NCBI GenBank assembly: GCA_002269645.1
Contig: NIVC01002395.1
Coordinates: forward strand, 62,001 to 126,000
Direction of reading: 5' to 3'
Length of the DNA stretch: 64,000 nt
Origin: Macrostomum lignano
Taxonomy: Eukaryota
Each line of letters opens with the position of its first letter. Within the stretch, counting starts at the first letter, position 1. The notes beneath the pieces were generated by a model. The model did no database searches and was not told the DNA's origin. It saw only the letters and a program-made list of their open reading frames with translations. A program made the position numbers and the translations under genes. Positions 11,434-59,100 of this stretch are shown here, in pieces.

Positions 11434-11490
<57 letters not shown>

Positions 11491-11491
11491 C

Positions 11492-11534
<43 letters not shown>

Positions 11535-11759: not shown

Positions 11760-11799
<40 letters not shown>

Positions 11800-14700: not shown

Positions 14701-15498
14701 GACAATTCGAATCCCCATTTTCAGCCCGGTAAAGTGCTGGATTAGAGCCTACCCAGCTCAAAATGACGCATTAAAGGCGGAGTTAAAAATATCCCAAGAA
14801 CCAACAAATTTAAAAGGCTAAATTGCTATTAATCGCAAAAAACTGAACTATAACAGCGGGGGGAGAATAATAGGAAAATGAAACAGAACTATTTCATAGT
14901 TGGGCAGCAACAAAATCTTACTGTCTTGATAATTATTTGTGATGAAGCGTGCGGCAGCTGGAAACGGAACAAAGAGCAAGTAAAACATTTGAATATAATA
15001 ATTATAACAGTCAACAACTTAAATTTAAGTGACAATTTCAGCCTTTAGGAGTCTATATAATACTTACATGCATATTCGATTCCTTATTAAAACGTCTATT
15101 TAAAAAAATTGAATTACACAACATATCGGCGATATATAAACAATTTTGTAAAAGACGGATATTTAATTAACAATTCGTTTTTAAATCAATCAAGTTTCGT
15201 TGCCAATTTTTAGATTAAGGGCATTGCTCGATTATAATCACTGAGTCGCTGAACTTTAATTAGATGACGAGGCAATTTTTACCAATTTAAATTTGAGATT
15301 TTTTACTCCGGCCTTTTACCCCATTAACAGATGTCACAACAGCTTACCGCTTGAAATTGCACAGTCGGAATTGGATGCTGGCCAGGCTGTAAAGCGTATT
15401 GATGCCCCGACATCGGCTCGGTAGTGTAGCCGATCATTGTAGGCGCCTGCTGAATTGACATTGGATGCTGTTGCTGCTGCTGTACCTGCTGTTGCTGT

Positions 15499-25020: not shown

Positions 25021-25404
25021 CAAAAGCAGACTGAATCGCTATATACTATTCAAAATAATTTCAGCTCGGTTATCTCTGCCTACGAACCCCTGCCCGGCGC
25101 TGGCGGCCCGGGATTGGCTGAAAATTCGAGTCACATCCGGGGGCCGCTCGGATAGAAGAGAAGATCGAGTCTGCTATTCTTCGAATGCGGTTTGTCTGAG
25201 GGCTAAAACAGATTTTAATTGCCAGCCCTAAACCACCCCACCCCACCAAACTTCGCGGGCGAATTTACCTTTTTACAATTTATGGTTGTCATGCGGGGTA
25301 AGAGAACTATGCAAGATCACGCGCGCAAAGCAGAACACTGCCACGTCTCGAGCAGTTTCTTATTAGAAGCAACATTTTTTGTCGATTGACTTGGCGCCTT
25401 TTGG

Positions 25405-26390
25405 ATAACTCTACCAATTCAAAATGACACTCTACCAATTTAAAATGGCACTCTACCAATTCAAAATGACACTCTACCAATTTAAAATGGCACTCTACCA
25501 ATTCAAAATGACACTCTACCAATTTAAAATGACACTCTACCAATTCAAAATGACACTCTACCAATTTAAAATGGCACTCTACCAATTCAAAATGGCATGA
25601 ATCTAACAATTCAAAATGACACTCTACCAATTCAAAATGGCATGACTCTACCAATTCAAAATGACACTCTACCAATTCACAATGACACTCTACCAATTCA
25701 AAATGACACTCTACCAATTTAAAATGACACTCTACCAATTCAAAATGACACTCTACCAATTTAAAATGGCACTCTACCAATTCAAAATGGCATGAATCTA
25801 ACAATTCAAAATGACACTCTACCAATTCAAAATGGCATGACTCTACCAATTCAAAATGACACTCTACCAATTTAAAATGACACTCTACCAATTCAAAATG
25901 ACACTCTACCAATTTAAAATGGCACTCTACCAATTCAAAATGGCATGAATCTAACAATTCAAAATGACACTCTACCAATTCAAAATGGCATGACTCTAAC
26001 AATTCAAAATGACACTCTACCAATTCAAAATGACACTCTACCAATTCAAAATGACACTCTACCAATTCAAAATGACACTCTACCAATTCAAAATGACACT
26101 CTACCAATTCAAAATGACACTCTACCAATTCAGAATGGCATGACTCTACCAATTCAAAATGGCATGACTCTACCAATTCAAAATGGCATGACTCTACCAA
26201 TTCAAAATGGCATGACTCTATCAATTCAAAATGGCACTCTACCAATTCAAAATGGCACTCTACCAATTCAAAATGGCATGACTCTATCAATTCAAAATGA
26301 CACTCTATCAATTCAAAATGGCATGACTCTATCAATTCAAAATGGCACTCTACCAATTCAAAATGACACTCTACCAATTCAAAATGACAC
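25405..26390. repeat. Minisatellite, 21-bp unit CAATTCAAAATGACACTCTAC with 24-bp variants
   Basis: Tandem copies. It produces the spurious ORF 25307..26410. Confidence 0.97.
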
Positions 26391-26779
26391 AACTTATACA
26401 AAAAGGCCACGATCTACGAGTCTAAAAGCGAGATCTACTCATCTAAAGTGGCACATTACTATAAAATGGCACTCTACTTTGCCATTTTAGACTGGTAAGT
26501 ACTATACGAAGATAGTACTTTGTACTTAGTACTATCCAAAGCGGTGCTGTAGCTGTACTATAAAATAGCATGAAAGTACAACTGTGATCTAATAGAAATA
26601 AATTCAGCAATAGATCATTTCAATATTTTACAAGTAAGTCTGTCCGCATCATATTTTTTATGCCCAAATGTCCTAGAAAATAAGACTGTCAAAACGAAAA
26701 CCGAAAATTTTAATAAAGCTAGCTGAAGTCGTATCACTGAATTGGGATTATAATTTCGTCCCAATCCGCCCTCTCTCAA

Positions 26780-41340: not shown

Positions 41341-41797
41341 TTTGGACTAAATAGCTTTATGCAGCCTTGAGATATACCATGCAATAGTTGTAGCTAAGCT
41401 ATTGGGTGTATGTTAATTATTTAAATTTGGATAGGTATAATCACTTATTATGAATTTTATATTTTTAGCTACTTAAACATCTAAAAATGCATAATTTTTT
41501 AACACTTTAATGTTATTATTTTTAAAATAGTTTTTCAAGGCCTAATGAAAATGCTATTGGAACCCTAAATCCTATAAAAATCTCTACCATTATCTTAAAT
41601 ATCTATGTAATTGCTTGCCAATTCAATCTTACATTACACAATTATATATACTAGTATGTACATGTATTGTAATAGGGCTTTATATAAATTTATTAAGTGC
41701 CTTTGAGTCATTTATTCTTTTTGTTTAAATTTAGCTATTTTCCTATCTGTTAGTCATTTTAATTTGAACTTTTTATGACTCAAGAAAGCTACAAAAT

Positions 41798-44575
41798 ATG
41801 AACAGTCAATCAACTGCAGTTCATGAGCTGCCTATTGTTCAGGCCAAAAGCGATGACCTCAAAGCCCAATTGAAGGCGCAGTATGAAAATGTGAAGCAAC
41901 TGAATTCTAGTGCTTTGGTCAAAGGTGACACCTGGGCTGTGGTGTCAGCGCGTTGGGTGAAGCTGTGGAAAGAATATGTTGGTGCTGAAGCTTTCTATGC
42001 AAACAAGCTGGGCGATGAGAACTATCACCCTGGACCAATTGACAACTCTGACCTCATTGAACCCGATGGGAAATTAAAGGAGGGTCGGTTGGCCGAGATC
42101 GACTACTTTTTCATGCACAAAGAAGCGTGGGATCTGCTGGCCGAGTACTACAAGACCAAGCAGTCAGAACCAATCTTTCGCAAAGTAATTGAGAAAGGAA
42201 AATTCACACGAACCGTAGAAGTCGAGGTCTACCTGTTGGACATGAAGCTGGCAGAGCTGGCCAACCCCGACAAGGTCATCAGCCATCGGTTCTCACGCGC
42301 CTCCCTGTTCTCTGAAGTCGAATCCACCATGAGGTCGCTGTTCAAAGTGCCCGACGATCGAGAGACGCGACTGTGGGTGTCGCTTAGCGGCACGCACTAT
42401 GAGTTACTTACTGACAAAGATCAGGCTCTGGAGAACCAGGTGTACAATAATCAGTACCTGGTGCTAGAGGTGAAGGGTACCGACGATAAGTGGCCACGCG
42501 GAGACGCACCGGGAAGCTTTACCATATCTCAAAACAGCAGCTACCTGCAAGGCACCGGTGGTCGGTTCAGCGCAGCCTCCTTTGCCAATGCCGGCTCTGG
42601 CAGTCAGGCGTCCGGCAGCGGCAGCAGCCAGCTGGAGCAACGCCGCAGCGCGACGCCCGGCTTGTGCGGTCTGTCCAACCTGGGCAACACGTGCTTTATG
42701 AACTCGGCTCTGCAGGCTCTGAGCAATGTTCAAATGCTCACTGAGTACTTTCTGTCTGAAAAGTGGAGGGAGGAACTGAATCCGGACAATCCCCTTGGCA
42801 TGCACGGTGAAATCGCCAGGCGGTACGGAGAGCTGATCCGGGATATGTGGTCTGGTAAGAATTGGCACATCTCGCCACGTAGTTTCAAGTATGCTGTAGG
42901 GCAGTTTGCTCCGCAGTTCTCCGGCTTTCAGCAGCAGGACGGCCAGGAGCTCATGGCGTTTCTTCTCGACGGCCTGCACGAGGACTTGAACCGCATCAAG
43001 AAGAAGCCCTACGTTGAATTAAAAGATGCTGACGGCCGTAGCGACCACGTGGTGGCGAAAGAGGCCTGGAACGACTACAAGTTGCGCAACGATTCCATTA
43101 TCGTTGATCTGTTTCACGGTCAGCTAAAGTCCACGCTTATCTGTCCTGATTGCCGCAAGGTGAGCGTCACCTTTGATCCATTTTGCTACCTAAGCCTGCC
43201 GGTACCCAAGGAACGCAATCGACTATTGGCATTCTTCTTTGTTAGCAAGGATCCAACTAAGCCGCCATTGAAATGCAAAGTGCAGGTTCCCATTGAGGGC
43301 CAGATTACCGATCTGTGCAAGGCCATTGGCCAGCAGTTCAAGGTGAAGCCTGACCACCTGCTTGTTGCCGACGTTTACAACAATAAATTTCACAAGGTGT
43401 ACGCTTCGGACGATTCCTACACCAGCATATCAAACGAGCGCGATTACATCTACGTGTACGAGCTGGACGCACCTGCCAATAGCACCAAACATGCCGTAGT
43501 GAAGGTTTACTTCGTCACCACGGCCAAGTATTCGCACGCATTCGGCCTGCCAATTGTGTTCTCCGTGCCGCTGACTGACATCACTTACGCTAACCTGTTT
43601 CAAACGGTTACAGAGAGGTCTTGTAGAATGCTGACGCTTAATTCGCCGGATCCGAAGAGCGCCACCTGGTGGAAGGACCATTCGTCAACTAAAGACGACG
43701 AGGGCATCTGCGACAGCGGCGAAGATGATGAAGCATCTCCGCAGAGCCCGCCGCCATTGTTTGTTCTTCGCCGATCGAACGCCAACCTGACAACTGAAAA
43801 CGAGCTGCTTGAAGCCAATTCCAGTGAAGCAGAACCGCTGTCGGTCTCCTCCGACCTCTACTTAATGGCTCGCTTTCATCCAAAGGCAAAGTTCTACTTT
43901 TGCAACGAGCAGAACGCTGTTCACTTTGAACGTCACTCGTCCGCTAGTATGATAATGCAGAAGCGGACGCACCACCTGGAGGACTGTCTGAAGCTATTCA
44001 CCGAAGAGGAAAGGCTAGGCAAGAAAGACGCCTGGTATTGTCCGAAGTGCAAAGATTTCAAATGCGCCTCAAAGAAATTTGACCTGTGGTGCATGCCCAA
44101 GGTGCTAGTAATCCATCTAAAGCGATTCCATTACGATCGTTACTATCGCAACAAGATTGACGATCTAATTGAATTTCCAACTCGCGGCTTGGACATGACC
44201 AACTGGCTGCTGAATCCGGAGGTGCAGGACTGCGCCACGTACGATCTGGTCTCGGTAGCCAATCACTATGGCTGCCTTGGGGGCGGCCACTACACGGCCT
44301 ACGGTATGAATTATCGCACTGGCAAGTGGCACTACTTTGACGACAGCAGCGTCAGGGAGAGCAGCGAGTCCGAAGCGGTCACAAAAGCCGCTTACGTGCT
44401 GATTTATGTCCGACGCGATCTCATGCCGCGGCTTGGCGATTCGTCGACCTCCGTTGATGGCGTCGCTGCCGATGCAGCTTCGCCAGGTGGCGCCGATCGA
44501 ATCGACACGGACGACGATGATATCACCGACAAGAAGGACGGCGGCAGCCAGCCGGAGCCAATGGAAGTCAATTGA
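41798..44575 (+). CDS. USP15: Ubiquitin-specific protease of the USP4/11/15 family (DUSP-UBL-split UCH domain), 925 aa, single coding exon
   Basis: Cys box GLSNLGNTCFMNSALQ, QQDGQELMAFLLDGLHEDLNR, zinc pairs CPDC/CPKC, His box HYGCLGGGHYTAY and WHYFDDSSV. N-terminal DUSP with PGPIDNSDL. Which of USP4, USP11 or USP15 cannot be resolved from sequence. Confidence 0.93.
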   Translation: MNSQSTAVHELPIVQAKSDDLKAQLKAQYENVKQLNSSALVKGDTWAVVSARWVKLWKEYVGAEAFYANKLGDENYHPGPIDNSDLIEPDGKLKEGRLAEIDYFFMHKEAWDLLAEYYKTKQSEPIFRKVIEKGKFTRTVEVEVYLLDMKLAELANPDKVISHRFSRASLFSEVESTMRSLFKVPDDRETRLWVSLSGTHYELLTDKDQALENQVYNNQYLVLEVKGTDDKWPRGDAPGSFTISQNSSYLQGTGGRFSAASFANAGSGSQASGSGSSQLEQRRSATPGLCGLSNLGNTCFMNSALQALSNVQMLTEYFLSEKWREELNPDNPLGMHGEIARRYGELIRDMWSGKNWHISPRSFKYAVGQFAPQFSGFQQQDGQELMAFLLDGLHEDLNRIKKKPYVELKDADGRSDHVVAKEAWNDYKLRNDSIIVDLFHGQLKSTLICPDCRKVSVTFDPFCYLSLPVPKERNRLLAFFFVSKDPTKPPLKCKVQVPIEGQITDLCKAIGQQFKVKPDHLLVADVYNNKFHKVYASDDSYTSISNERDYIYVYELDAPANSTKHAVVKVYFVTTAKYSHAFGLPIVFSVPLTDITYANLFQTVTERSCRMLTLNSPDPKSATWWKDHSSTKDDEGICDSGEDDEASPQSPPPLFVLRRSNANLTTENELLEANSSEAEPLSVSSDLYLMARFHPKAKFYFCNEQNAVHFERHSSASMIMQKRTHHLEDCLKLFTEEERLGKKDAWYCPKCKDFKCASKKFDLWCMPKVLVIHLKRFHYDRYYRNKIDDLIEFPTRGLDMTNWLLNPEVQDCATYDLVSVANHYGCLGGGHYTAYGMNYRTGKWHYFDDSSVRESSESEAVTKAAYVLIYVRRDLMPRLGDSSTSVDGVAADAASPGGADRIDTDDDDITDKKDGGSQPEPMEVN

Positions 44576-44693
44576 TTGACTATTAGACTGTCGCTATGTG
44601 CTTTTTTAATTTAAACACTGAAAGAGAAGTTACAAGGATGATTTAATTGACTCGAAACATTTGTTTGAAATTATTTATCGTAATATGAAAGAA

Positions 44694-46191
44694 TAGAATG
44701 GATTGCTAATCTAGCTAGTTCATTAATAAAAGCATGTAATGGATTGCTAATCTAGCTAGTTCATTGATGAAAGTATGGAATGGATTGCTAATCTAGCTAG
44801 TTCATTGATGAAAGTATGGAATGGATTGCTAATCTAGCTAGTTCATTGATGAAAGTATGGAATGGATTGCTAATCTAGCTAGTTCATTGATGAAAGCATG
44901 TAATGGATTGCTAATCTAGCTAGTTCATTGATGAAAGTATGGAATGGATTGCTAATCTAGCTAGTTCATTGATGAAAGCATGGAATGGATTGCTAATCTA
45001 GCTAGTTCATTGATGAAAGTATGGAATAGATTGCTAATCTAGCTAGTTCATTGATGAAAGTATGGAATGGATTGCTAATCTAGCTAGTTCATTGATGAAA
45101 GTATGGAATGGATTGCTAATCTAGCTAGTTCATTGATGAAAGCATGTAATGGATTGCTAATATAGCTAGTTCATTGATGAAAGTATGGAATGGATTGCTA
45201 ATCTAGCTAGTTCATTGATGAAAGTATGGAATGGATTGCTAATCTAGCTAGTTCATTGATGAAAGTATGGAATGGATTGCTAATCTAGCTAGTTCATTAA
45301 TAAAAGCATGTAATGGATTGCTAATCTAGCTAGTTCATTGATGAAAGTATGGAATGGATTGCTAATCTAGCTAGTTCATTGATGAAAGTATGGAATGGAT
45401 TGCTAATCTAGCTAGTTCATTGATGAAAGTATGGAATGGATTGCTAATCTAGCTAGTTCATTGATGAAAGTATGGAATGGATTGCTAATCTAGCTAGTTC
45501 ATTGATGAAAGTATGGAATGGATTGCTAATCTAGCTAGTTCATTGATGAAAGTATGGAATGGATTGCTAATCTAGCTAGTTCATTGATGAAAGTATGGAA
45601 TGGATTGCTAATCTAGCTAGTTCATTGATGAAAGTATGGAATGGATTGCTAATCTAGCTAGTTCATTGATGAAAGTATGGAATGGATTGCTAATATAGCT
45701 AGTTCATTGATGAAAGCATGGAATGGATTGCTAATCTAGCTAGTTCATTGATGAAAGTATGGAATGGATTGCTAATCTAGCTAGTTCATTGATGAAAGCA
45801 TGTAATGGATTGCTAATCTAGCTAGTTCATTGATGAAAGTATGTAATGGATTGCTAATATAGCTAGTTCATTGATGAAAGTATGGAATGGATTGCTAATC
45901 TAGCTAGTTCATTGATGAAAGTATGGAATGGATTGCTAATCTAGCTAGTTCATTGATGAAAGTATGGAATGGATTGCTAATATAGCTAGTTCATTGATGA
46001 AAGCATGGAATGGATTGCTAATCTAGCTAGTTCATTGATGAAAGTATGGAATGGATTGCTAATCTAGCTAGTTCGTTGATGAAAGCATGTAATGGATTGC
46101 TAATCTAGCTAGTTCATTGATGAAAGTATGGAATGGATTGCTAATCTAGCTAGTTCATTGATGAAAGTATGTAATGGATTGCTAATCTAGC
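44694..46191. repeat. Satellite of ~36 copies of a 41-bp unit GAATGGATTGCTAATCTAGCTAGTTCATTGATGAAAGTATG
   Basis: Tandem copies starting ~120 bp after the USP stop codon. Confidence 0.98.
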
Positions 46192-47353: not shown

Positions 47354-48837
47354 TAATTTATTGGCTCATCACCATTTATTTTTTACTTTTCTTCTGGGTT
47401 TCTTCGAATAATAAAATTCCAAAAAAACGAATTTTTGGGTTTATTTTATTTCATATTTATTCAGGATCTTTTTAAAATTCGACCCCTATCCAAGTTTCGT
47501 AGTTTTTCTGCCTTTTGTTTCTTCATGTTCTAAGACCGAAAAAATAAACCAACAGGCTAATAACCCATATGTATGGTTTGTTATTAATTGTTATTAACGT
47601 AGTTAAGACCGTCTTTCTTTTTAATTGAAAATTTCCGTTGAAGCGTAAAATATATTCGTCTTTGTCGCTTTAAATTTGTCTCATTTCCGTTTATTTTCTC
47701 TGTTTAGATAAAAACAGTACCCTTAAAATCAATTGTACATTGACTGGCTTTTATAGGTACAACACTGCCCGTACGCAACCTAGCCAACCCACGGCGCCCG
47801 CCACCCCAATCTCTACCCCATGTTGTACATTCGCCCAGCTGAATAAGCCCGCACCCCCTTCTAACCGCGGCTTCACCGCCCACGTGAATGTACATATGCG
47901 ATAAAAGCTCTTATCTTTACAACGCCTCAGGCTCACACTTGGGCTAGGTCTCCTAACCAAATAAGGCAATGGTAAGGAGTTATTAAAAACATTATAAACA
48001 AATGGCACTAAAGCTCACATTACTACTAATAGTTCCACGGGTCAAAAATTGTCAAATCAATGTACAGTTTGTTCAAACCCGTTAAAATTTATTCAAGCAA
48101 TCTTTGGCTCGCGGAGCTACAAGCAGTAATGTGAACGGGTCTTTAAGTGAAGCTGTATTGTTGATTTTATTCAAACTGCAACTTTCACATTGGTCCATGG
48201 ACCAAATTAATCCACCGTACTCTGGGCCATATTCTGGGGTATGTTGTTCGTAGAAAAATAAGATTTTCTTCTTTTCAATTCACTAGGATGCCCAATTGCC
48301 GAATCTATTTTCAGTTTGTCTTTTTTTAAAGTCTTGTTGATATACATAAAAATTGATTTCTTAACAATAAACCAACTGGTCATTGCTTTTTGTATGTCAT
48401 AACTTTCTCTGTTAAAATTTGTTTTCTAAGATTAGGAAGCTATATATTAGGAAGTTCAGGTATATAGTTTTAATCTGGGCTCAAAATCTTGCTACCAAAT
48501 CCCATAGCAAACTGATCAAGTTGGGAATTTCTCATCCCTTTGGATGCATTGTTTGAAAAACTATCAAAGCGATTGCTTTTATTAATTTTCGATGATAGGT
48601 TGGTCAAATGAAAAAAGGACATTATTTAATTATTTTATTGCTTCAACTTAACATACCTTGCCACTTGCCACGTAGCGTTAGCAGCACATTAGAAATTGTG
48701 ACTATGAATCAAGATTTTCTTTCACTTCTTTTTGTTCGATAAAGACGTAAATTCTGTCTGCAAATAATGCATGACATAAACTGCTTGAGCGCACTGTGAC
48801 ATGCACAGCAATCCTTGAATTATTAAATCCGTGAGTT

Positions 48838-49548
48838 ATGGAACTGCAAGTCATATTGAAAGCGCAGTACAAAAATGTAAAGCAGCTGAATGCTATTGCA
48901 TTGGAAAAGGGCGACATCTGGTCCGTAGTGTCAGCGCGTTGGGTGAAGCGGTGGAAACAATACGTTGGTGCTGAAGCTGATTGTGCTAACAAGCTGGGCG
49001 ATGAAAACTATCACCCTGGACCGATTGACAACTCTGACCTTATTGACTCTGATGGGAAATTAAAAGAGGGCCGATTGGCTGCTGAAATCGACTACTTTTT
49101 CATGCACTTGGAGGCCTGGGAGTTGTTAGCCGAGTACTATGGTACCAAACAGCCAATGCCAATCTTTCGCAAAGTAATCGAGAAAGGAAGATTCACGCGC
49201 ACCTTGGAAGTCGAGGTCTACCTGTTGGACATGAAGCTGGCAGAGCTGGCCAACCCCGACAAGGTCATCAGCCATCGGTTCTCACGCGCCTCCCTGTTCT
49301 CTGAAGTCGAATCCACCATGAGGTCGCTGTTCAAAGTGCCCGACGATCGAGAGACGCGACTGTGGGTGTCGCTTAGCGGCACGCACTATGAGTTACTTAC
49401 TGACAAAGGTCAGGCTCTGGAGAACCATGTGAGCAATAATCAGTACCTGGTGCTAGAGGTGAAGAGTTCTAATGGACAGTGGCAGTGCCAAAGTGAGTCA
49501 AAAGTTTTTCTGTCACTATTTTTATGCAGTCTTAAAATTATATTTTAA
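48838..49548 (+). CDS. Partial USP4/15 duplicate (copy 2): DUSP-UBL only; possible exon 1 (48838-49492) of a tandem gene
   Basis: Open ORF aligning to about aa 20-235 of the full USP. Its 5' half is diverged and includes an in-frame 3-nt insertion. About 200 nt of the UBL half is identical to the full gene. Confidence 0.75.
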   Translation: MELQVILKAQYKNVKQLNAIALEKGDIWSVVSARWVKRWKQYVGAEADCANKLGDENYHPGPIDNSDLIDSDGKLKEGRLAAEIDYFFMHLEAWELLAEYYGTKQPMPIFRKVIEKGRFTRTLEVEVYLLDMKLAELANPDKVISHRFSRASLFSEVESTMRSLFKVPDDRETRLWVSLSGTHYELLTDKGQALENHVSNNQYLVLEVKSSNGQWQCQSESKVFLSLFLCSLKIIF

Positions 49549-49560
49549 AACATTCTAGAA

Positions 49561-50442
49561 TTGACCTCTGAAAATATGAACAGTCAATCAACTGCAGTTC
49601 ATGAGCTGCCTATTGTTCAGGCCAAAAGCGATGACCTCAAAGCCCAATTGAAGGCGCAGTATGAAAATGTGAAGCAACTGAATTCTAGTGCTTTGGTCAA
49701 AGGTGACACCTGGGCTGTGGTGTCAGCGCGTTGGGTGAAGCTGTGGAAAGAATATGTTGGTGCTGAAGCTTTCTATGCAAACAAGCTGGGCGATGAGAAC
49801 TATCACCCTGGACCAATTGACAACTCTGACCTCATTGAACCCGATGGGAAATTAAAGGAGGGCCGATTGGCCGAGATCGACTACTTTTTTATGCACTTGG
49901 AGGCCTGGGAGTTGCTGGCCGAGTACTACTCTACCAAGCAGCCAATGCCAATCTTTCGCAAAGTAATTGAGAAAGGAAAATTCACACGAACCGTAGAAGT
50001 CGAGGTCTACCTGTTGGACATGAAGCTGGCAGAGCTGGCCAACCCCGACAAGGTCATCAGCCATCGGTTCTCACGCGCCTCCCTGTTCTCTGAAGTCGAA
50101 TCCACCATGAGGTCGCTGTTCAAAGTGCCCGACGATCGAGAGACGCGACTGTGGGTGTCGCTTAGCGGCACGCACTATGAGTTACTTACTGACAAAGATC
50201 AGGCTCTGGAGAACCAGGTGTACAATAATCAGTACCTGGTGCTAGAGGTGAAGGGTACCGACGATAAGTGGCCACGCGGAGACGCACCGGGAAGCTTTAC
50301 CATATCTCAAAACAGCAGCTACCTGCAAGACACCGGTGGTCGGTTCAGCGCAGCCTATTTTGCCAATGCCGGCTACTCTGGGAAGGGTGCCGACGGTAAG
50401 TGGCCACGCGGTGACGCACCCGGAAGTTGTACCATATCTTAG
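49561..50442 (+). CDS. Partial USP4/15 duplicate (copy 3): DUSP-UBL plus linker, stops before the catalytic Cys box; possible exon 2 (from 49559)
   Basis: Near-identical to aa 1 to ~265 of the full USP and ends at TAG 50440-50442. It may instead be a pseudogene. Confidence 0.75.
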   Translation: MTSENMNSQSTAVHELPIVQAKSDDLKAQLKAQYENVKQLNSSALVKGDTWAVVSARWVKLWKEYVGAEAFYANKLGDENYHPGPIDNSDLIEPDGKLKEGRLAEIDYFFMHLEAWELLAEYYSTKQPMPIFRKVIEKGKFTRTVEVEVYLLDMKLAELANPDKVISHRFSRASLFSEVESTMRSLFKVPDDRETRLWVSLSGTHYELLTDKDQALENQVYNNQYLVLEVKGTDDKWPRGDAPGSFTISQNSSYLQDTGGRFSAAYFANAGYSGKGADGKWPRGDAPGSCTIS

Positions 50443-50903
50443 AACAGCAACTCAGCTCAGTCTACCCGGTCAGCGCAGCCTAACTTGTGACCAAGCACCC
50501 ACAATCGTAAACCGAGATACGAGTAGTTTTTTGTTAAAGTTGCTGATATTTTTTCAAATTACTTCTGATACTTACTAAAATATATTTGGTATATTTAACC
50601 CAATAGAAAATTTTATCGCTCAAGTATTTTTCTAAATTTCTACTTTATTATATTGTGTCCTAGAAAGTCGGATAGAATTACATGTTACTACTAACTAAGT
50701 AGCTTAAATCCTTTAGGATTTGTTTAAATAAAGAGTATCAATCCTGATAACATATAACAAATCATATTGCAGCGTGCAGAATCAATGTTGTCTTCATTAA
50801 AGAATGATTAGAAAAGGCATCGGATCAACAAGCTTCTGATTGGCTACAATTGAAATAAAGTAACCACAGCCAGCGCAAGCCAGCTACAGGCTCCGCTGCA
50901 GAA

Positions 50904-52713
50904 ATGGGCCCGTTCCCCTTTCGCCTGGTGCCTATGCTGGACGAGCAGCACGACATTCTAGTGCTGACTGGCCTGATTGGCCTGGTAGTGGTGCTGCTGG
51001 CCTACTATGCTTACAAGCGGCTGTACTGGTCCAGATCCATTCCTATACCTATCGATCTGCCCAAGCTGCCCAGGGTGCCATTGTTTAACGATACTCGGCC
51101 GCATTTTCGTAAACGCGATCGAATTCGTTATTGGGTTCGACGGGTGATGCGTCAGGCTCCGCTGCCCAATGTACTGTTGGAGGCCAGGCGGCAGAAACCT
51201 GCAGCGGCTGTGTCTAATATACTCAAATACCTGAGACAGGTGTGCTGTGGGGGCGCACTGCTGGATTCTGTGTTTAGTAATGTGGAGCTGAATGGGATTC
51301 TGCATGGTTTGATGCAGGACGCTGAATGAGATTCTGCATGATTTGATGAAGGAAGCTGAATAGGATTCTGCATGGTTTGATGCAGGACGCTGAATGGGAT
51401 TCTGCATGGTTTGATGAAGGAAGCTGAATAGGATTCTGCATGGTTTGATGCAGGACGCTGAATGGGATTCTGCATGGTTTGATGCAGGACGCTGAATGGG
51501 ATTCTGCATGGTTTGATGCAGGAAGCTGAATGGGATTCTGCATGATTTGATGCAGGAAGCTGAATGGGATTCTGCATGGTTTGATGCAGGACGCTGAATG
51601 GGATTCTGCATGGTTTGATGCAGGACGCTGAATAGGATTCTGCATGGTTTGATGCAGGACGCTGAATGGGATTCTGCATGATTTGATGAAGGAAGCTGAA
51701 TGGGATTCTGCATGGTTTGATGCAGGACGCTGAATGGGATTCTGCATAGTTTGATGCAGGAAGCTGAATGGGATTCTGCATGGTTTGATGCAGGACGCTG
51801 AATGGGATTCTGCATGATTTGATGAAGGAAGCTGAATGGGATTCTGCATGGTTTGATGCAGGACGCTGAATGGGATTCTGCATAGTTTGATGCAGGAAGC
51901 TGAATGGGATTCTGCATGGTTTGATGCAGGACGCTGAATGGGATTCTGCATAGTTTGATGCAGGACGCTGAATGGGATTCTGCATGATTTTATGCAGGAA
52001 GCTGAATGGGATTCTGCCTGACTACGGTATATCGGAATAAGTAGAATGGGATTCTAATACGATTCCACCTTCCTAATTAAAGGTCGGGCCCCGTGGCAGC
52101 GTTGGTCGCGTGCCGCTGGCCCGCGCTCGCATCTCGGCCATCCCGGACTACTTCCTGGAGCCCGAGGATCGCGACGCGGACGAGCCGACCATGCTAAATG
52201 AATTTTATCTGGCAATTAAATCCGTGCGAATATTCGGCAGTCTGGAGCGCTCCTTCATCATGGAGCTGTGCAAGTGCCTGGAGATCATGGAGCTTCGTGC
52301 CGGCGATGCCCTGTTTAAGATTGGCGACATCGATGGCGACATGTTCATTGTGCAGACCGGCCGCGTGCAGCTCTACATGACTGAGGACGGTGAGGCCCGC
52401 TTGTAGTGTGTTTCATGCCCGTGTGCTTTTTGGCAGCTTGCGGCTGATCCTGGGAATTCATGGAAGCTCAGCCACTTTCATCCTGTCTGTCTCTTTCTTT
52501 CTCTCCTCTCCCCTCTACGACTCATTCGAGATGTACATAGCGCCTGCGTACGTTTTTAATCCACATTTGCGCGCTCCTCACTCACACATCGAGCTATCGC
52601 ATTTATATCGGAGACCATCTCGCTTAAAAATATTTGCGTTCATAATCGCCCTGGGGAAGAATATCGGCACTTTGCTTGAATTGTCTGTCTATCTGTCTGT
52701 CTGTCTGTCTCTG

Positions 52714-52754
<41 letters not shown>

Positions 52755-52805
52755 GCCTGTCTGTCTGTCTGCCTGTCTGTCTGTCTCTGTGTCTGTCTGT
52801 CTGTG

Positions 52806-52842
<37 letters not shown>

Positions 52843-52963
52843 GTCTGTCTCTGTGTCTGTCTGTGTGTCTGTCTGTCTGTCTGTCTCTGTCTGTCTGTCT
52901 GTCTATCTGTCCGTCTGTCTGTCTGTGTCTGTCTCTGTCTGTCTGTCTGTCTGTCTGTCTGTG

Positions 52964-52996
<33 letters not shown>

Positions 52997-53019
52997 GTCT
53001 GTCTGTCTGTCTGTCTCTG

Positions 53020-53104
<85 letters not shown>

Positions 53105-56100
53105 GACTGACTCTCTGTCTGTCTGTCTGTGTCTGTCTCTGTCTGTCTGTCTATCTGTCTGCCTGTCTGTCTGTCTGTCTGTCTGACTGACTCTCTGTCT
53201 GTCTGTCTGACTGACTCTCTGTCTGTCTGTCAGTTGCCAACCCAGCCCGCCCCCCTTCAATCCGCAGGTGTGCAGCACCGATTCCACGAGTTCGGGCCCA
53301 ACCAGCCGGTCTACTCGCTGCTAAGCTTCCTAGACGTGCTGACGGGCCACCCGCGGCCCTATCGAACCCTGTCAGCAGAGGCGGTCACCGACGCCAAGGT
53401 GCTGCGCATTCCTTCCCGCCGTCTAGTTGGCCTGTTCGCCCAGCAGCAGTTCCAGCAGACCATGGTGCGCATAGTCCAGGTGATCACCATCCGACTGCAG
53501 CGGGTCACCTTTCAAGCCTTGAATAACTATTTGAGCCTGAGCACGGAATTGTTTAGCGCCGATAGGCAGTCGCTGCCGGACTGCGAGGTGCTCAAACTGC
53601 AGGGACGAATTGCTGAGCTGTCTGGCGTTCCCCTTCTGGTGTCGAGTAAAACAGCAGCTTCTGCCGCGGCTGCGTCTTCGTCTGGCGGAGCTGCTGAAGC
53701 TGCGGCTGCTGCTGCATCGGCCAGTCTGGGGGACAGCGGCAGTAGCGGTGAGTGCAGACCGGTTGTCTAGCCTGGTGGGCTGCTCTATAGATATTGATCT
53801 AGGCTGCTCTAGAGATACATACGCTGTTCCATAGATACTGATGGCTGCTCTATAGATGTTGATCTAGGCTGTTCTATAGATACTGATAGGCTGCTCTATA
53901 GATGTTGATCTAGGCTGTTCTATAGATACTGATAGGCTGCTCTATAGCTATTTATCTAGGCTGCTCTATAGATATTGATCTAGGCTGCTCTATAGATATT
54001 GATCTAGGCTGCTCTATAGCTATTGATCTAGGCTGCTCTATAGATATTGATCTAGGCTGCTCTATAGATATTGATCTAGGCTGCTCTATAGCTATTGATC
54101 TAGGCTGCTCTATAGATATTGATCTAGGCTGCTCTATAGATATTGATCTAGGCTGCTCTATAGCTATTGATCTAGGCTGCTCTATAGCTATTGATCTAGG
54201 CTGCTCTATAGATGTTGATCTAGGCTGCTCTATAGCTATTGATCTAGGCTGCTCTATAGATATTGATCTAGGCTGCTCTATAGCTATTGATCTAGGCTGC
54301 TCTATAGATATTGATCTAGGCTGCTCTATAGCTATTGATCTAGGCTGCTCTATAGATATTGATCTAGGCTGCTCTATAGCTATTGATCTAGGCTGCTCTA
54401 TAGATATTGATCTAGGCTGCTCTATAGCTATTGATCTAGGCTGCTCTATAGATATTGATCTAGGCTGCTCTATAGATATTGATCTAGGCTGCTCTATAGA
54501 TATTGGTAGACTACTATATATAAATTGATAGACTACTCTATAGAGATTGATAGGCTACTCTAGAGAGATGTATATAAATTACCGGAAGAGGTAGGTTGAC
54601 CACCCAGGAAATTGATAGACTAACTTGGGAAATTGAGGGCATTCATTGAAGAAAATTTGAAAGGTCATCAAGATCCGAAGACAGTCTTGAACTCAATAGT
54701 AGCTTAGCTCGCCGGTGACACCGCATCCCGCTCATCTGGTTTATTGTTTTCCAGCCGCCGGTGGTCAGTCTCTTATTGAACAGGCGCAGCAGCAGCAGCG
54801 GCATTATCACCAAGACCAGACACCGCCAGTCCGCGTGTACACCCGCTCCCGGTCTCGGTCTCCGTCGGCGGCGGAATCTTCCACCGCAGCGTCCGACGCT
54901 CAGACAGTTGCCGCCGCTGTCGCCGCCTCGCCCGACGCGCCTTCCGTTTCAGCTTCGAACGACACCGATACGGACTTCGACGCCGCGGTTGAGAAGGCGT
55001 TGGGCAATCGGCGTACTAAGAAAGGCAGTCTGGAAGGCTTGGAGATGGGCGAACTACCAAGGCGTCACATGTCGCTAAGTTTGCACTCAGGTGGAGGCGG
55101 CGGTGGCAGCGGCAGACGGCGGACATCGCGGGTGCCAGCAAACGAGCAGAGCGACGCGTTTCTGAGCACTTTGATGGCGGCGGCTAAGAAGGTAAAATTA
55201 GTGCGGCTCTGGCTTGAAGATGGGATGGGATTGATGGGTTCTCACTCTTGGACTCTTGGATAGGTAGTGTGGCCTGTGGGATGGGTTCTCAGATGGGTGG
55301 TGTTGGATGGGTTCTCAGATGGGTGGTGTTGGGTGCTTTCTTACTCGTAGATCAGAGGTGTGGGATGGGTGTTGGGTGGGTTCTCAGTGGGTGGTGTGGG
55401 ATGGGTTCTCAGATGATGGTGTGGGATGGGTTCTCAGATGGTGGTGTGGGATGGGTTCTCATATAGTGGTGTGGGATGGTTTCTCAGAAAGGTGGTATCT
55501 CAGTAGGTGGTGTGGGATGGGTTCTCAGTGGGTTGTATGGGATAGGTTCTCAGTGGGTGGTGTTTCTGTGTTCTTATATGGTGGTGTAGGATGGGTTCTC
55601 ATATGGTTATGTAGGATGGGTTCTCTGAAAAATCACTGCCATATAAATTTGAGCACTCAACGATTCCCCAATCCCCCATCCGCAGGACATTGCGGCAGTA
55701 TTCGGCCTGCCGGACGCCTCGCTACTGGAGGACCGGGTGACCCTGGCCAGGGTGAAGGCTGGCGCCAAGCTGGTCCGCCAGGGCGACCATTCGCCCAATC
55801 TATTCTTCGTAGTCAGTGGCCGCCTGCACCTGCTGCAGCAGTGCCACCCGCTGTCGGCCAGCGCGCCACCCGCAGTGAACACCCTGTACTCGGTGCTGCC
55901 CGGCGAGATGACCGGCATGATTTCAGCGCTGACTGGCGAAGCGTCGCTGTTCACCATCCGCTGCGAGGAGGAGGCCCACGTGGCTGTGATCACCTGTCGG
56001 GATTTCTACGCTGTGTTGCGCCAACAGCCCAGCGCCGCTTTACACGTGGCGCATTTTATTGTACGCCGAATGTCGCCGTTCCTTCGGCAGATTGACTTCG

Positions 56101-59100
56101 TATTGGATTGGCTGTTTCTGGAGTCCGGCAAGCCGCTTTATAAACAGGGCGACATTGCCAGCAATGTTTATATTGTGCTGCAGGGCCGCCTGCGGCAGGC
56201 GCACACAACGCCTGAGGGGCACAAGCAGCTCACTGGGGAGCTGGGCCGCGGCGACTGGATCGGCTTTCTGGAGGTATATTTGCCTGCTTTCTGCGGCTTC
56301 TCGGTGCTGTTTGGCCAGCCTCCCATATCCTCAGTTGCTGGGCCAGCCTCCCAGATCCTCAGTTGCTGGGCCAGCCTCCCAGATCCTCAGTTGCTGGTGG
56401 CCAGCCTCCCATATCCTCAGTTGCTGGGCCAGCCTCCCAGATCCTCAGTTGCTGGGCCAGCCTCCCATATCCTCAGTTGCTGGGCCAGCCTCCCAGATCC
56501 CCAGTTGCTGGGCCAGCCTCCCAGATCCTCCGTTGCTGGGCCAGCCTCCCAGATCCTCCGTTGCTGGGCCAGCCTCCCAGATCCTCAGTTGCTGGGCCAG
56601 CCTCCCAGATCCCCAGTTGCTGGGCCAGCCTCCCAGATCCTCCGTTGCTGGGCCAGCCTCCCAGATCCTCCGTTGCTGGGCCAGCCTCCCAGATCCTCAG
56701 TTGCTGGTGGCCAGCCTCCCAGATCCTCAGTTGCTGGGCCAGCCTCCCAGATCCTCCGTTGCTGGGCCAGCCTCCCAGATCCTCAGTTGCTGGGCCAGCT
56801 TCCCAGATGCTCAGTTGCTGGGCCAGCCTCCCAGATCCTCAGTTGCTGGGCCAGCCTCCCAGATCCTCAGTTGCTGGGCCAGCCTCCCAGATCCTCCGTT
56901 GCTAGGCCAGCCTCCCAGATCCTCAGTTGCTGGGTCAGCCTCCCAGATCCTCCGTTGCTAGGCCAGCCTCCCAGATCCCCAGTTGCTGGGCCAGCCTCCC
57001 AGATCCTCCGTTGCTGGGCCAGCCTCCCAGATCCTCCGTTGCTGGGCCAGCCTCCCAGATCCTCAGTTGCTGGTGGCCAGCCTCCCAGATGCTCAGTTGC
57101 TGGGCCAGCCTCCCTGATCCTCCGTTGCTAGGCACTCTACCAGAACCTGCATCCAATTCTAAATTCGCGCAGGTGTTCACCCTGCGCCCCCGCGCCACCA
57201 CGGTCATCGCTGTCCGAGACAGCGAACTCGCCCAGATCCCCGTTGACCTGCTGAACATGATCAAGCGCCGGCACCCGCATATCGTCACCCGGTTGATCAC
57301 AGTGCTGTCCCAGCGACTGCTAGGCAACATTGTTGACAATCCCGGCGGCTCAGGCCGCGGCGCCGACATGGTGGACCTGCACCGGGTGCCCATGGCCAAC
57401 CTCCGCTCCGTGGCGCTGTTCCCAGCCAGCTCGCGGGTGCCGCTCGAGGCCTTCGCCTTGGAGCTGCAGCACGCCCTGTCTATTGTTGGGCCCAGCATGC
57501 GCCTGACCTCGCAGATTGTGCTCAAACGGTTCGGTCGGCGGGCATTCGAGCGCGACAATGAGTATAGAATGACCAGCTGGCTGGCCCAGCAGGAGGACAA
57601 TCACCGGCTGCTGCTGTACCTGTGCGATCTCGAGCGCACCGTCTGGACTCGGCGTTGCATTCGACAGGCCGACTGTCTGCTGATTGTGGCCTTGGCCGAC
57701 GAGAAAGTTGACGCTATGAATCACGTTAAGCGGGTTAGTGTTGGGATTTGATTTTTATCTGCTTTTCTGTGTGGATTGGGGCTGGATTGTGTTGTGGATT
57801 ATGGAGTGGTTCTGGCTTGGGTTGTGGGGTGGATTGACGCTGTATTGTGGGGTGGATTGAGGCTGGGTTATGGGGTGGATTGGGGCTGGGTTATGGGGTG
57901 GATCGGGGCTGGGTTATGGGGTGGATTGGGGCTGGGTTATGGGGTGGATTGGGGCTGGGTTATGGGGTGGATTGGGGCTGGGTTATGGGGTGGATCGGGG
58001 CTGGGTTATGGGGTGGATTGGGGCTGGGTTATGGGGTGGATTGGGGCTGGGTTATGGGGTGGATCGGGGCTGGGTTATGGGGTGGATTGACGCTGTATTT
58101 TGGGGTGGATTGAGGCTGGGTTATGGGGTGGACTGGGGCTGGGTTATGGGGTGGATTGGGGCTGGGTTATGGGGTGGATTGGGGCTGGGTTATGGGGTGG
58201 ATTGGGGCTGGGTTATGGGGTGGATTGGGGCTGGGTTATGGGGTGGATTGGGGCTGGGTTATGGGGTGGATCGGGGCTGGGTTATGGGGTGGATTGGGGC
58301 TGGGTTATGGGGTGGATTCAAGCTGGATCATGTGATGTTAGGCGTGCTGTATCCCATTGTTTTCCTCACTTCTGTGTCTCCAAACCTCAGGTGGTGCTGC
58401 CGGACTCCAGCCGGTTGCTGAACATGCTGATCCTGCTGCACCGCGAATCAGTCGAGTACCCAACGCCAGGCAAGGCGGCGGAGCTTCTTAACAAAGCTTC
58501 CGAGCCGCACTTCGATAATCAGCTAGTTATCCAGCAGCATCTGCACATCCGGGTGCCTAAGCGCGTGTTCGCCCGGCGCAGTTCCAATCGAGTGCTGGAG
58601 ACCTACAGGGCTGTGCTGTCCGAGCCGCCCAATCCAATGTCGGACATGTGCCGGCTGGCCAGGGTTATCACTAGCACTGCCGTTGGCCTGGTGCTGGGCG
58701 GCGGCGGGGCCCGGGGCCTGTCGCATCTGGGCGTGATCCGCGCCCTGACTGAGGCTGGCATCCCTATCGACATGGTTGGCGGCACCTCGATTGGCTCTTT
58801 TGTTGGCGCTCTGTGGGCGGAGGAGACGCAACGATTGGACCGATTTCAGGTAATTTTTTTCAATTGACTCCCGAATAGCGGGATTGGACTAATTCAGTTT
58901 TCCAATCATTCCAATTATTTTATTTTTTTCACCTTATGCAATACCGAATTACAAATGGAATGAGAATATACAATATTTGCCCTACGCTCATTCTCTCTCC
59001 TCTCCCCTTCTCTCCCCCTCTCCCTCTCTCCCTCTCCCTCTCTCCCTCTCTCCCTCTCCCCTTCTCTCCCTCTCTCCCTCTCTCCCTCTCCCTCTCTCCC

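What the first reader, a model, noticed from the sequence alone, without database searches (positions are those of the whole stretch)
48838..50442. Two truncated USP copies can splice in frame into a catalytically dead tandem (DUSP-UBL)x2 protein
Seen: copy 2 ends ..TGC CAA A|GTGAGT (strong donor at 49493). A 66-nt AT-rich segment with a CTTAA branch-like motif ends CATTCTAG| (49558). Then AA completes AAA and runs in frame into copy 3 (TTG ACC TCT GAA AAT ATG..). The product is 218+1+293 = 512 aa: two DUSP-UBL modules and no Cys/His boxes. Copy 2 keeps its frame despite many substitutions and a 3-nt insertion. Established: in USP4/USP15 the DUSP-UBL unit binds partners such as SART3 and modulates catalysis in USP4. 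Inference: a lineage-specific bivalent decoy, adaptor or dominant-negative regulator encoded next to its parent enzyme. This is the best candidate for an undescribed system in the window.
Basis: partly seen in the sequence, partly recalled or inferred. Interest (0 to 1): 0.75.

Follow-up and report, generated by a model that had tools for sequence, protein, structure and literature searches.

The report
Truncated USP gene duplicates in a flatworm
Two partial tandem copies of the front end of a flatworm deubiquitinase gene are real and could be spliced in frame, but comparison with sister loci shows a variable, recently neutrally evolving gene-fragment family, not a conserved two-module decoy protein.

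Summary
The window is Macrostomum lignano contig NIVC01002395.1. An intronless, catalytically intact USP4/11/15-type gene lies at 41798-44575. It is followed by copy 2 (48838-49484), copy 3 (49571-50374) and a 71-nt fourth fragment. Each full copy has DUSP+UBL and no USP domain. Removing 49493-49558 (GTGAGT...TAG, 66 nt) gives a 512-aa ORF.

The two ORFs already share one genomic frame, split by a single TAA, so an in-frame GT..AG is guaranteed. Only the strong donor is unusual (1.5% of shuffled spacers). The "intron" is co-duplicated 5' flank from a ~790-bp tandem duplication.

Two homeologous loci in the same assembly differ:
- One keeps the tandem: a 73-nt intron, still in frame, but copy 3 has lost its ATG.
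- The other has a single hybrid copy. This is the only one with an RNA-based gene model (BOX15_Mlig013358g2, 250 aa).

No tandem product is on record apart from a chimeric ab initio model. Recent changes in the truncated copies look neutral (16 nonsynonymous : 7 synonymous, against 0:5 in the parents). Older divergence shows partial constraint (omega ~0.2-0.3).

Most likely this is a gene-converting family of partial duplicates. It may encode a marginally useful single-module DUSP-UBL protein. No RNA data were available to test the splice.

The parts
41798..44575 (+). Parent gene: an intronless 925-aa USP4/11/15-type deubiquitinase (DUSP-UBL-USP with intact Cys and His boxes). It corresponds to GenBank BOX15_Mlig004366.
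   Evidence: ORF. Pfam finds DUSP, Ubiquitin_3 and UCH. It is 99% identical to P0161 and identical to P0280 apart from a 6-residue 5' extension. The annotated gene span equals the CDS length, so it is a single exon.
48694..48837 (+). 5' flank of copy 2. Its first ~85 nt are the older homologue of the copy2-copy3 spacer. An in-frame TGA lies at 48832-48834, just upstream of the ATG.
   Evidence: It is 70% identical to 49484-49570 over 76 aligned nt, collinear at the 790-nt repeat period. Only 1.3% of shuffles score as high.
48838..49484 (+). Copy 2: truncated DUSP (about 48910-49176) plus UBL (about 49234-49485). It has a new ATG at 48838, has lost the parent's first ~18 codons, and carries an in-frame GCT insertion (codon 81).
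   Evidence: The ATG and the copy-2-type 5' segment are kept at all three loci.
49485..49570 (+). Spacer, which is the tandem-duplication junction plus co-duplicated flank. It contains the putative 66-nt microintron 49493-49558 (GTGAGT...TTCTAG) and the only in-frame stop between the two ORFs (TAA 49546-49548). An alternative acceptor, CTGCAG|, ends at 49597 and would give a 105-nt intron.
   Evidence: The alternative acceptor is the one used in the ab initio model P0282.
49571..50374 (+). Copy 3: truncated DUSP-UBL plus linker, 97.5% identical to the parent, with its own ATG at 49576. A ~95-nt tract (about 49860-49955) is copy-2-like instead of parent-like.
   Evidence: At locus B the ATG is ATA and the same tract is parent-like.
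50382..50452 (+). Partial fourth copy: a repeat of the post-UBL linker (50250-50320). It supplies the TAG stop of the copy-3 ORF (50440-50442) and contains a consensus donor, GACG|GTAAGT, at 50396.
   Evidence: 87% identical to parent 42472-42542. It is absent at locus B and present at locus C, where a TAG sits at the junction.
50904..51240 (+). Context only: first coding exon of the downstream NTE/PNPLA6-like gene on the same strand, 462 nt after the copy-3 stop. An SL-acceptor-like CTGCAG ends 2 nt before its ATG.
   Evidence: (P0281).

Best explanation
The finding is a small, lineage-specific family of partial duplicates of the 5' end (DUSP-UBL module) of an intronless USP4/11/15-type gene of Macrostomum lignano. 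The copies lie in the 6.3-kb gap between that gene and the NTE/PNPLA6-like gene.

Shown:
- A ~0.8-kb piece of the parent was copied downstream and lost its original start.
- That piece was then duplicated in tandem with a ~790-bp period that included ~90-140 nt of its own 5' flank.
- Since then it has been reshuffled by gene conversion with the parent and by unequal crossing-over. As a result, the three homeologous loci of this recently polyploid genome now carry 2+ copies, 2 copies and 1 copy.
- The proposed 'intron' is the co-duplicated flank.

Inferred:
- The unit with any claim to function is the single-module ORF that starts at the copy-2-type ATG. That ATG is conserved at all three loci, and one locus carries an RNA-based 250-aa gene model.
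- Copy 3 and the in-frame GT-AG are locus-specific by-products.
- The copies evolved for a long time under partial constraint (omega ~0.3 on their lineage). Since the loci separated, they have changed as neutral sequence would.
- So they are most likely transcribed, decaying or at best marginally useful gene fragments. If translated, the product would be a catalytically inert DUSP-UBL protein.
For: Identity and anatomy:
- The window is identical to L003, Mlig_3_7 contig NIVC01002395.1.
- Homology blocks to the parent are given.
- The spacer is 70% identical to the 5' flank of copy 2, in repeat register.

Gene conversion:
- A 203-nt stretch (49206-49408) is identical in all three copies, although copy 2 differs at 14.7% of sites elsewhere (P ~1e-14).
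- A 95-nt tract of copy 3 is copy-2-like in the window but parent-like at locus B.

Structural variation between loci:
- B has no fourth fragment, copy 3 has ATG>ATA, and the spacer has a 7-nt indel.
- C has a single hybrid copy.

Annotation:
- Only locus C has a gene model, PAA83135.1 / A0A267GAR1, 250 aa.
- The GenBank annotation is RNA-seq based (PMC5730564).
- No CDS is annotated between the USP and NTE genes at loci A or B.

Selection:
- Private changes are 16 nonsynonymous: 7 synonymous in the truncated copies and 0:5 in the parents (Fisher p = 0.005). The estimated omega is ~0.9, and omega <= 0.3 is rejected at p ~0.01.
- The window's copy 2 carries derived changes at positions that are nearly invariant in the family: D191G, Y199S, D212N, P216Q, R217C.
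Against: - The DUSP segment of copy 2 diverged from the parent with pairwise omega 0.17-0.18. This rejects 0.5 (2dlnL ~10) and 1.
- Polarised with an outgroup, the truncated lineage shows 11 nonsynonymous: 15 synonymous changes, below neutral (p = 0.001). The copies were therefore not free-running pseudogenes for most of their history.
- No truncated copy has a frameshift or stop inside DUSP-UBL, and their Pfam scores equal the parent's.
- The old and recent N:S ratios do not differ significantly (Fisher p = 0.085), so a steady omega of ~0.4-0.5 is possible.
- The GTGAGT donor and an AG acceptor are kept at both tandem loci, and the fusion frame survives a 7-nt indel.
- Missing annotation at loci A and B could be caused by multi-mapping reads or by the pipeline's filters.
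Confidence: 0.6

Rival explanations
1. The truncated copy is a functional single-module gene. The ORF starting at the copy-2-type ATG (236-250 aa, unspliced) would be expressed as a free DUSP-UBL protein. It would modulate the neighbouring USP in trans or compete for its partners. Copy 3 would be a redundant extra.
For: - There is an RNA-based gene model at locus C, Mlig013358g2, 250 aa, single exon (PMC5730564).
- The ATG and the copy-2-type 5' segment are conserved at all three loci.
- Long-term omega on this lineage is ~0.3, significantly below 1.
- Isolated USP4 DUSP-Ubl binds and activates the USP4 catalytic domain in trans (PMC4243247).
- DUSP-UBL-only isoforms and DUSP-UBL fused to RING/TRIM modules are widely predicted.
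Against: - Recent substitutions look neutral, 16 nonsynonymous: 7 synonymous.
- The C-terminal ends differ at every locus.
- The window's copy 2 has changes at near-invariant UBL positions.
- Only one of three loci is annotated.
- No orthologue in another species could be examined.
Confidence: 0.25
2. The 66-nt (window) or 73-nt (locus B) microintron is removed. The result is a 512-/484-aa (DUSP-UBL)x2 protein that acts as a bivalent decoy, adaptor or dominant-negative regulator.
For: - The strong GTGAGT donor is rare by chance in this spacer (1.5%) and is kept at locus B, where the acceptor is a better CAG.
- A 7-nt indel falls inside the putative intron, so the spliced frame is preserved even though the genomic frames differ.
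- At locus B copy 3 has no ATG of its own, yet it stays open in the fusion frame.
- Microintrons with consensus splice sites and poor pyrimidine tracts exist in flatworms, including M. lignano (PMC6530080). GT[GA]AG is the dominant M. lignano donor (PMC8629364).
- An ab initio model (A0A1I8I947) picked the same donor.
- A (DUSP-UBL)x2-RING protein is predicted in Lymnaea.
Against: - There is no RNA or protein evidence, and none of the four possible fusion products is on record.
- Locus C has no tandem at all.
- The linker peptide differs between loci (KLTSENMNSQ versus NLISEKISSR), and so do the tails.
- The in-frame property is trivial, because the ORFs share one genomic frame.
- The indel had a ~70% chance of landing inside the 'intron' anyway.
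- Recent evolution looks neutral, including four private nonsynonymous changes in copy 3 at locus B.
- The five introns seen in the neighbouring gene are ~0.7-1.9 kb with CAG|G acceptors.
- The SART3 motif is not conserved.
Confidence: 0.1
3. The tandem copies are an assembly artefact: mis-joined or collapsed reads from the highly redundant DV1 genome.
For: - Mlig_3_7 is a redundant assembly of a polyploid line with many repeats (PMC5730564).
- Stretches of 100% identity between copies could invite mis-assembly.
Against: - The tandem occurs on two separate contigs that differ by substitutions and indels throughout.
- The gene model from the earlier ML2 assembly reproduces the window's copy 2 and copy 3 residues exactly.
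- Copy 2 has its own diverged sequence and flank.
Confidence: 0.03

Closest known systems
N-terminal DUSP-UBL module of USP4/USP11/USP15
   Same: Both truncated copies match Pfam DUSP (PF06337) and Ubiquitin_3 (PF14836) as well as the parent does, and in the same order. Best hits outside Macrostomum are USP15/USP4 at ~38-42% identity.
   Different: There is no USP catalytic domain. The SART3-contact motif GLFVKH reads GKFTRT/GRFTRT (PMC4914101). The parent gene is intronless.
BOX15_Mlig013358g2 (PAA83135.1, UniProt A0A267GAR1, 'DUSP domain-containing protein', M. lignano)
   Same: It is the homeologous counterpart on contig NIVC01000432.1. It has the same position between the USP and NTE genes, the same copy-2-type ATG and 5' segment, and DUSP+UBL only.
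   Different: It is one hybrid copy of 250 aa, not a tandem, and parent-like from about codon 72 onwards. It ends at a TAG at the junction with the fourth fragment. It is annotated from RNA evidence, whereas the window's copies are not annotated.
UniProt A0A1I8I947 (ab initio model from the ML2 assembly, 1925 aa)
   Same: It contains the window's copy 2 and copy 3 residue for residue, joined from the same donor at 49493.
   Different: It uses the acceptor at 49597 (a 105-nt intron). It chains USP + copy 2 + copy 3 + NTE into one protein, which the RNA-based annotation contradicts, since that annotation has separate USP and NTE genes.
Lymnaea stagnalis A0AAV2I8H1: (DUSP-UBL)x2 plus a C-terminal RING
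   Same: Two tandem DUSP-UBL modules and no USP domain, in a predicted protein.
   Different: It carries a RING E3 domain, is ~37% identical, has an independent origin and is also unstudied.
TRIM/RING-DUSP-UBL fusions (Ruditapes TRIM36-like P0077; fish TRIM25-like P0435, P0289) and short DUSP-UBL-only predicted isoforms of vertebrate USP15/USP4
   Same: The DUSP-UBL module is used without the protease domain.
   Different: These have a single module, attached to E3 domains or produced by alternative 3' ends of the full gene. They are not separate duplicated loci.
Duplicated (unprocessed) partial pseudogenes that undergo gene conversion with the parent gene
   Same: Truncated at both ends; mosaic identity tracts; copy-number differences between loci; a neutral recent substitution pattern.
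   Different: No frameshift or stop within the retained domains. The older divergence shows omega ~0.2-0.3. One locus has a transcript-based gene model.
Flatworm microintrons (<75 nt)
   Same: The putative intron is 66/73 nt with a consensus donor and a weak polypyrimidine tract (PMC6530080, PMC8629364).
   Different: Removal from RNA has not been shown. The window's acceptor is TAG, not the prevalent CAG.

Membership tests
USP4/USP11/USP15 deubiquitinases | N-terminal DUSP domain followed by a UBL domain | tested here: met
   Pfam matches PF06337 and PF14836 in the parent, copy 2 and copy 3. Bit scores are 60-63 and 55-59, with cut-offs of 29 and 24.
USP4/USP11/USP15 deubiquitinases | USP (UCH) catalytic domain with Cys and His boxes | tested here: not met
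   Copies 2 and 3 have no PF00443 match, and homology to the parent ends at 42494 / 42596. The parent itself meets this feature (E = 3e-70). The copies are therefore derivatives of this family, not members.
USP4/USP15 SART3-binding DUSP-UBL | Linker motif GLFVKH (F127, V128, H130 of USP4) that docks into SART3 HAT-C | tested here: inconclusive
   The aligned motif is GKFTRT (parent, copy 3) or GRFTRT (copy 2). Phe is kept; Val>Thr and His>Thr (PMC4914101). Binding cannot be tested here.
Spliceosomal microintron | GT...AG boundaries with a consensus donor, length under 75 nt | tested here: met
   AAA|GTGAGT ... TTCTAG|, 66 nt. At locus B: GTGAGT ... TTCCAG|, 73 nt.
Spliceosomal microintron | Removal from RNA (junction reads or cDNA) | not testable with these tools
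   No RNA-seq data were accessible. Exact look-ups of the four possible spliced products found nothing. There is no gene model at loci A or B.
Non-functional duplicated gene fragment (unprocessed pseudogene) | Truncated relative to the parent, with loss of the original start and of essential domains | tested here: met
Non-functional duplicated gene fragment (unprocessed pseudogene) | Disabling frameshift or stop within the retained coding region | tested here: not met
   All five truncated copies at the three loci are open across DUSP-UBL. Only the copy-3 ATG is lost, at locus B.
Non-functional duplicated gene fragment (unprocessed pseudogene) | Neutral substitution pattern (omega ~1) | tested here: inconclusive
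   Recent private changes are 16 nonsynonymous: 7 synonymous, omega ~0.9. Older divergence gives omega 0.17-0.3, below 1. The two ratios do not differ significantly (p = 0.085).
Conserved tandem (DUSP-UBL)x2 protein gene | The same two-module structure at homeologous or orthologous loci | tested here: not met
   Loci A and B are tandem, but locus C has a single copy. Other species could not be examined.

The most novel reading that the evidence does not exclude
At the two tandem loci, the 66/73-nt flank-derived microintron is really spliced. M. lignano would then make a 484-512-aa, catalytically dead (DUSP-UBL)x2 protein, born from a tandem duplication junction, that tunes or antagonises the neighbouring USP. 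This would be an example of a new two-module regulator and a new intron arising together from one duplication.
Probability: 0.08. Interest if true: 0.5.

Novelty: new member of a known kind. Interest (0 to 1): 0.25.

Why it matters
If the copies are decaying or marginal gene fragments, the locus is an ordinary but well-resolved example of three things. First, how partial tandem duplication, unequal crossing-over and gene conversion play out across the homeologous copies of a recently polyploid genome. Second, how a duplication junction can create a plausible intron by accident. Third, why ab initio gene models chain such fragments into chimeras (UniProt A0A1I8I947).

If the single-module or tandem product is functional, it would be a natural 'DUSP-UBL in trans' regulator of a USP15-type enzyme. 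That effect has so far been shown only in vitro, for USP4 (PMC4243247). M. lignano is a tractable model with RNAi and transgenesis, so the question is cheap to settle.

Tried and rejected
- **Protein search with the 512-aa fusion.** It returned nothing closer than 42% identity, and I first took the species to be absent from the database. One search, using the full parent, showed this was wrong: there are 99%-identical M. lignano entries. Absence of hits is therefore not evidence.
- **Exact look-ups.** The window's parent, copy 2, copy 3, the 512- and 499-aa fusions and the locus-B equivalents were all absent.
- **Homology between the parent's upstream region and the spacer or the copy-2 flank.** This was not significant. 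The similarity I saw by eye (TGAGTCA and others) was dropped.
- **A further USP fragment in the window.** None was found.
- **Rfam and tRNA scans.** They gave only a tRNA-Glu, which is irrelevant here.
- **Full-text search for Mlig013358 and Mlig004366.** No papers.
- **SL trans-splicing at 49558 as an alternative to cis-splicing.** The motif is TTCTAG in the window and TTCCAG, which fits YTNCAG, at locus B. The ATG at the end of the SL would be out of frame at both loci (PMC8629364). This stays possible but untestable.
- **A second full-length paralogue as donor of copy 2's diverged DUSP segment.** The only other M. lignano paralogue family is 48% identical, which is too distant.
- **Assembly artefact.** Rejected, as explained under the rival explanations.
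- **Structure prediction.** Not run, because it could not discriminate between the hypotheses.
Full report
**What is there.** The region 48838-50442 holds two ORFs in the same strand and frame.
- Copy 2 runs 48838-49548 (236 aa). Copy 3 runs 49561/49576-50442 (293/288 aa).
- Both match Pfam DUSP and the USP4/15-type UBL (Ubiquitin_3), and neither has a USP domain.
- 4.3 kb upstream lies a 925-aa intronless ORF (41798-44575) with DUSP, UBL and a complete USP domain.
- Removing 49493-49558 (AAA|GTGAGT...TTCTAG|, 66 nt) joins 655 + 884 nt into a 512-codon ORF with the predicted junction peptide.

**Source and annotation.**
- The full parent protein is 99% identical to Macrostomum lignano BOX15_Mlig004366g1.
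- The window is base-for-base identical to Mlig_3_7 contig NIVC01002395.1 (locus L003).
- My first protein search, with the fusion as query, missed these entries, so its lack of close hits means nothing.
- The GenBank annotation of this assembly comes from genome-guided RNA-seq assembly (PMC5730564).
- At the window's locus that annotation has the USP gene as a single exon. It also has the downstream NTE/PNPLA6-like gene, starting at 50904. Nothing is annotated between them.

**Anatomy and origin.** BLAST defines three homology blocks to the parent:

| Copy | Window coordinates | Parent coordinates | Identity |
|---|---|---|---|
| Copy 3 | 49571-50374 | 41793-42596 | 97.5% |
| Copy 2 | 48841-49483 | 41855-42494 | 87.6% |
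| Fourth fragment | 50382-50452 | 42472-42542 | 87% |

- Copy 2 has lost the parent's first ~18 codons. It starts at a new ATG with a TGA two codons upstream.
- The 86-nt spacer is not related to the parent's upstream region.
- The spacer is 70% identical, in register with the 790-nt repeat period, to the 5' flank of copy 2 (only 1.3% of shuffles score as high).
- So the proposed intron is flank sequence that was co-duplicated when a ~790-bp unit (flank + truncated gene) was duplicated in tandem. The GTGAGT lies at the junction, and its older homologue reads TGAATC.

The three copies form a mosaic:
- 49206-49408 is identical in all three, although copy 2 differs at 14.7% of sites elsewhere (P ~1e-14).
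- In 49071-49165, copies 2 and 3 share 14 states against the parent.
- Elsewhere copy 3 equals the parent.

This is the signature of repeated gene conversion.

**Is the in-frame splice remarkable?** Much less than it looks.
- The two ORFs are already in one genomic frame, separated by a single TAA (49546-49548).
- In 1000 shuffles of the spacer, an in-frame, stop-free GT..AG join was always available.
- Only the strong GTRAGT donor is unusual, at 1.5% of shuffles.
- The intron length is acceptable for this organism. Flatworms, M. lignano included, have a class of introns under 75 nt with consensus sites and weak pyrimidine tracts (PMC6530080). GT[GA]AG and CAG are the dominant M. lignano motifs (PMC8629364).
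- Against that, the five introns I could map in the neighbouring NTE gene are 0.7-1.9 kb with CAG|G acceptors. The mean intron length in the genome is ~1.1 kb (PMC5730564).

**Comparison with homeologous loci.** M. lignano is a recent hidden polyploid (PMC10468722), and the assembly holds two more copies of this neighbourhood.

Locus B (L001, NIVC01001481.1):
- It has the tandem.
- The donor is kept, the acceptor is TTCCAG, and a 7-nt insertion makes the 'intron' 73 nt.
- The genomic frames of the two copies therefore differ, but the spliced product (484 aa) stays in frame.
- Copy 3 has lost its ATG (ATA). The fourth fragment is absent. The copy-2-like tract of copy 3 is parent-like there.

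Locus C (L002, NIVC01000432.1):
- It has a single hybrid copy: copy-2-type 5' end, parent-type remainder, and a stop at the junction with the fourth fragment.
- It has no GTGAGT junction.
- This copy is the only one annotated: BOX15_Mlig013358g2 = PAA83135.1 = UniProt A0A267GAR1, 250 aa, single exon.

The only public sequence containing the tandem is UniProt A0A1I8I947. This is a 1925-aa ab initio model from the older ML2 assembly. It chains USP + copy 2 + copy 3 + NTE, using the donor at 49493, the acceptor at 49597 and a further donor at 50396. The RNA-based annotation contradicts that chain. None of the four possible tandem products is on record.

**Selection.**
- Copy 2 against the parent gives omega 0.28 overall, but the value is uneven along the gene.
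  - In the DUSP segment (codons 7-123), maximum-likelihood omega is 0.17-0.18. This rejects 0.5 (2dlnL ~10) and 1 (2dlnL ~27-29). Differences by codon position are 13/10/36.
  - In the last 29 codons, omega is ~1 or more, with differences of 7/5/5 by codon position.
- The window's copy 2 has derived residues at near-invariant family positions: D191G, Y199S, D212N, P216Q, R217C.
- A Logan contig from a related species (L004, 71% amino-acid identity) polarises the DUSP changes. The truncated lineage has 11 nonsynonymous: 15 synonymous changes, below neutral (p = 0.001). The parent lineage has 2:9.
- Changes private to one sequence among the eight (five truncated copies and three parents) tell a different story. 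They are 16 nonsynonymous: 7 synonymous in the truncated copies. That gives omega ~0.9, compatible with neutrality and rejecting omega <= 0.3 at p ~0.01. In the parents they are 0:5 (Fisher p = 0.005).
- The old and recent ratios do not differ significantly (p = 0.085).

My reading is as follows. The truncated copies are clearly less constrained than the parent. They were not free-running pseudogenes over the long term. Since the loci separated, they have shown no detectable constraint.

**Function.**
- Isolated USP4 DUSP-Ubl has no DUB activity and does not bind ubiquitin. It does bind and activate the USP4 catalytic domain in trans (PMC4243247).
- SART3 binds the GLFVKH linker motif of USP4 (PMC4914101). 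That motif is GKFTRT/GRFTRT here, so SART3 binding cannot be assumed.
- DUSP-UBL without a protease domain is not rare in predicted proteomes. Examples are short USP15/USP4 isoforms, TRIM-DUSP-UBL fusions in a clam and in fish, and a Lymnaea protein with two DUSP-UBL modules and a RING.
- The proposed architecture is therefore not without precedent, although none of these proteins has been studied.

**Verdict.**
- Most likely (about 0.6): a gene-converting, copy-number-variable family of partial duplicates. At least one locus is transcribed. The tandem and its in-frame GT-AG are by-products of the duplication junction.
- Real alternative (about 0.25): a functional single-module DUSP-UBL protein.
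- The spliced bivalent protein (about 0.1) is not excluded, because no RNA data were accessible. It is not conserved among the three loci, however, and recent evolution gives it no support.
- A mis-assembly is very unlikely.

The finding is a new, unstudied member of a known kind (truncated duplicate of a multidomain enzyme gene) and is of modest interest.

Noticed in passing
window 50390-50402: A single A>G change in the fourth fragment creates a perfect donor, GACG|GTAAGT (the parent reads GACGATAAGT). The ab initio UniProt model A0A1I8I947 uses it to splice copy 3 onto NTE exon 1, producing a 1925-aa chimera of USP + copy 2 + copy 3 + NTE.
   Followed up: partly
L002 about 6550 (equivalent to window ~44279): The parent USP at homeologous locus C has a 1-nt deletion in a G5 run inside the His box. 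Its annotated product is truncated to 842 aa (P0278). This could be a long-read assembly error or real inactivation of that homeologue.
   Followed up: partly
window 42197-42214 (parent), 49183-49200 (copy 2), 49975-49992 (copy 3): The SART3-docking motif of human USP4 (GLFVKH) reads GKFTRT or GRFTRT in this flatworm gene and its copies. Mollusc, brachiopod, spider and frog USP15 keep G[MT]FVKH.
   Followed up: partly
L004 1-1019 (Logan contig of run SRR31628392): This is the orthologue of the parent's N-terminus in a related, unnamed species (71% amino-acid identity). The reading frame breaks at CAG|GTGCGT right after ...ALENQ. That suggests an intron which the intronless M. lignano gene lacks. 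TTTCCAG (the SL-acceptor motif) lies 8 nt before its ATG.
   Followed up: no
proteins P0288, P0289, P0077, P0435 (not in the window): Lymnaea stagnalis A0AAV2I8H1 has two DUSP-UBL modules plus a RING finger. Fish TRIM25-like and clam TRIM36-like predicted proteins carry a C-terminal DUSP-UBL. The module has been recruited repeatedly away from the protease.
   Followed up: partly
window 50884-50903: The NTE/PNPLA6-like gene has CTACAG and CTGCAG (the M. lignano SL trans-splice acceptor motif YTNCAG) ending 14 and 2 nt before its ATG. It lies only 462 nt downstream of the copy-3 stop on the same strand. By the published <1 kb criterion this spacing would count as operon-like.
   Followed up: no
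window 44562-46190; 51151-52130; 52590-53290; 53789-54650; 56259-57200; 57680-58430; 59897-60660; 10062-11900; 13221-14705; 25307-26490: Long minisatellite and microsatellite arrays (units of 41, 34, 8/12, 24, 28, 23 and 17 nt, among others) fill most introns and intergenic spaces. One starts exactly at the USP stop codon. They generate many spurious long ORFs.
   Followed up: no
window 48015-48134: A 121-nt imperfect palindrome (66% self-complementary) lies about 0.7 kb upstream of copy 2.
   Followed up: no
window 6679-6750 (minus strand): tRNA-Glu (anticodon TTC). It is the only Rfam or ARAGORN hit in the window.
   Followed up: no
window 49493-49590 versus L001 16765-16870: The spacer and the first ~15 nt of copy 3 differ by ~15-29% plus a 7-nt indel between loci A and B. 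The flanking copy-2 coding sequence and upstream flank differ by about 1-2%.
   Followed up: partly
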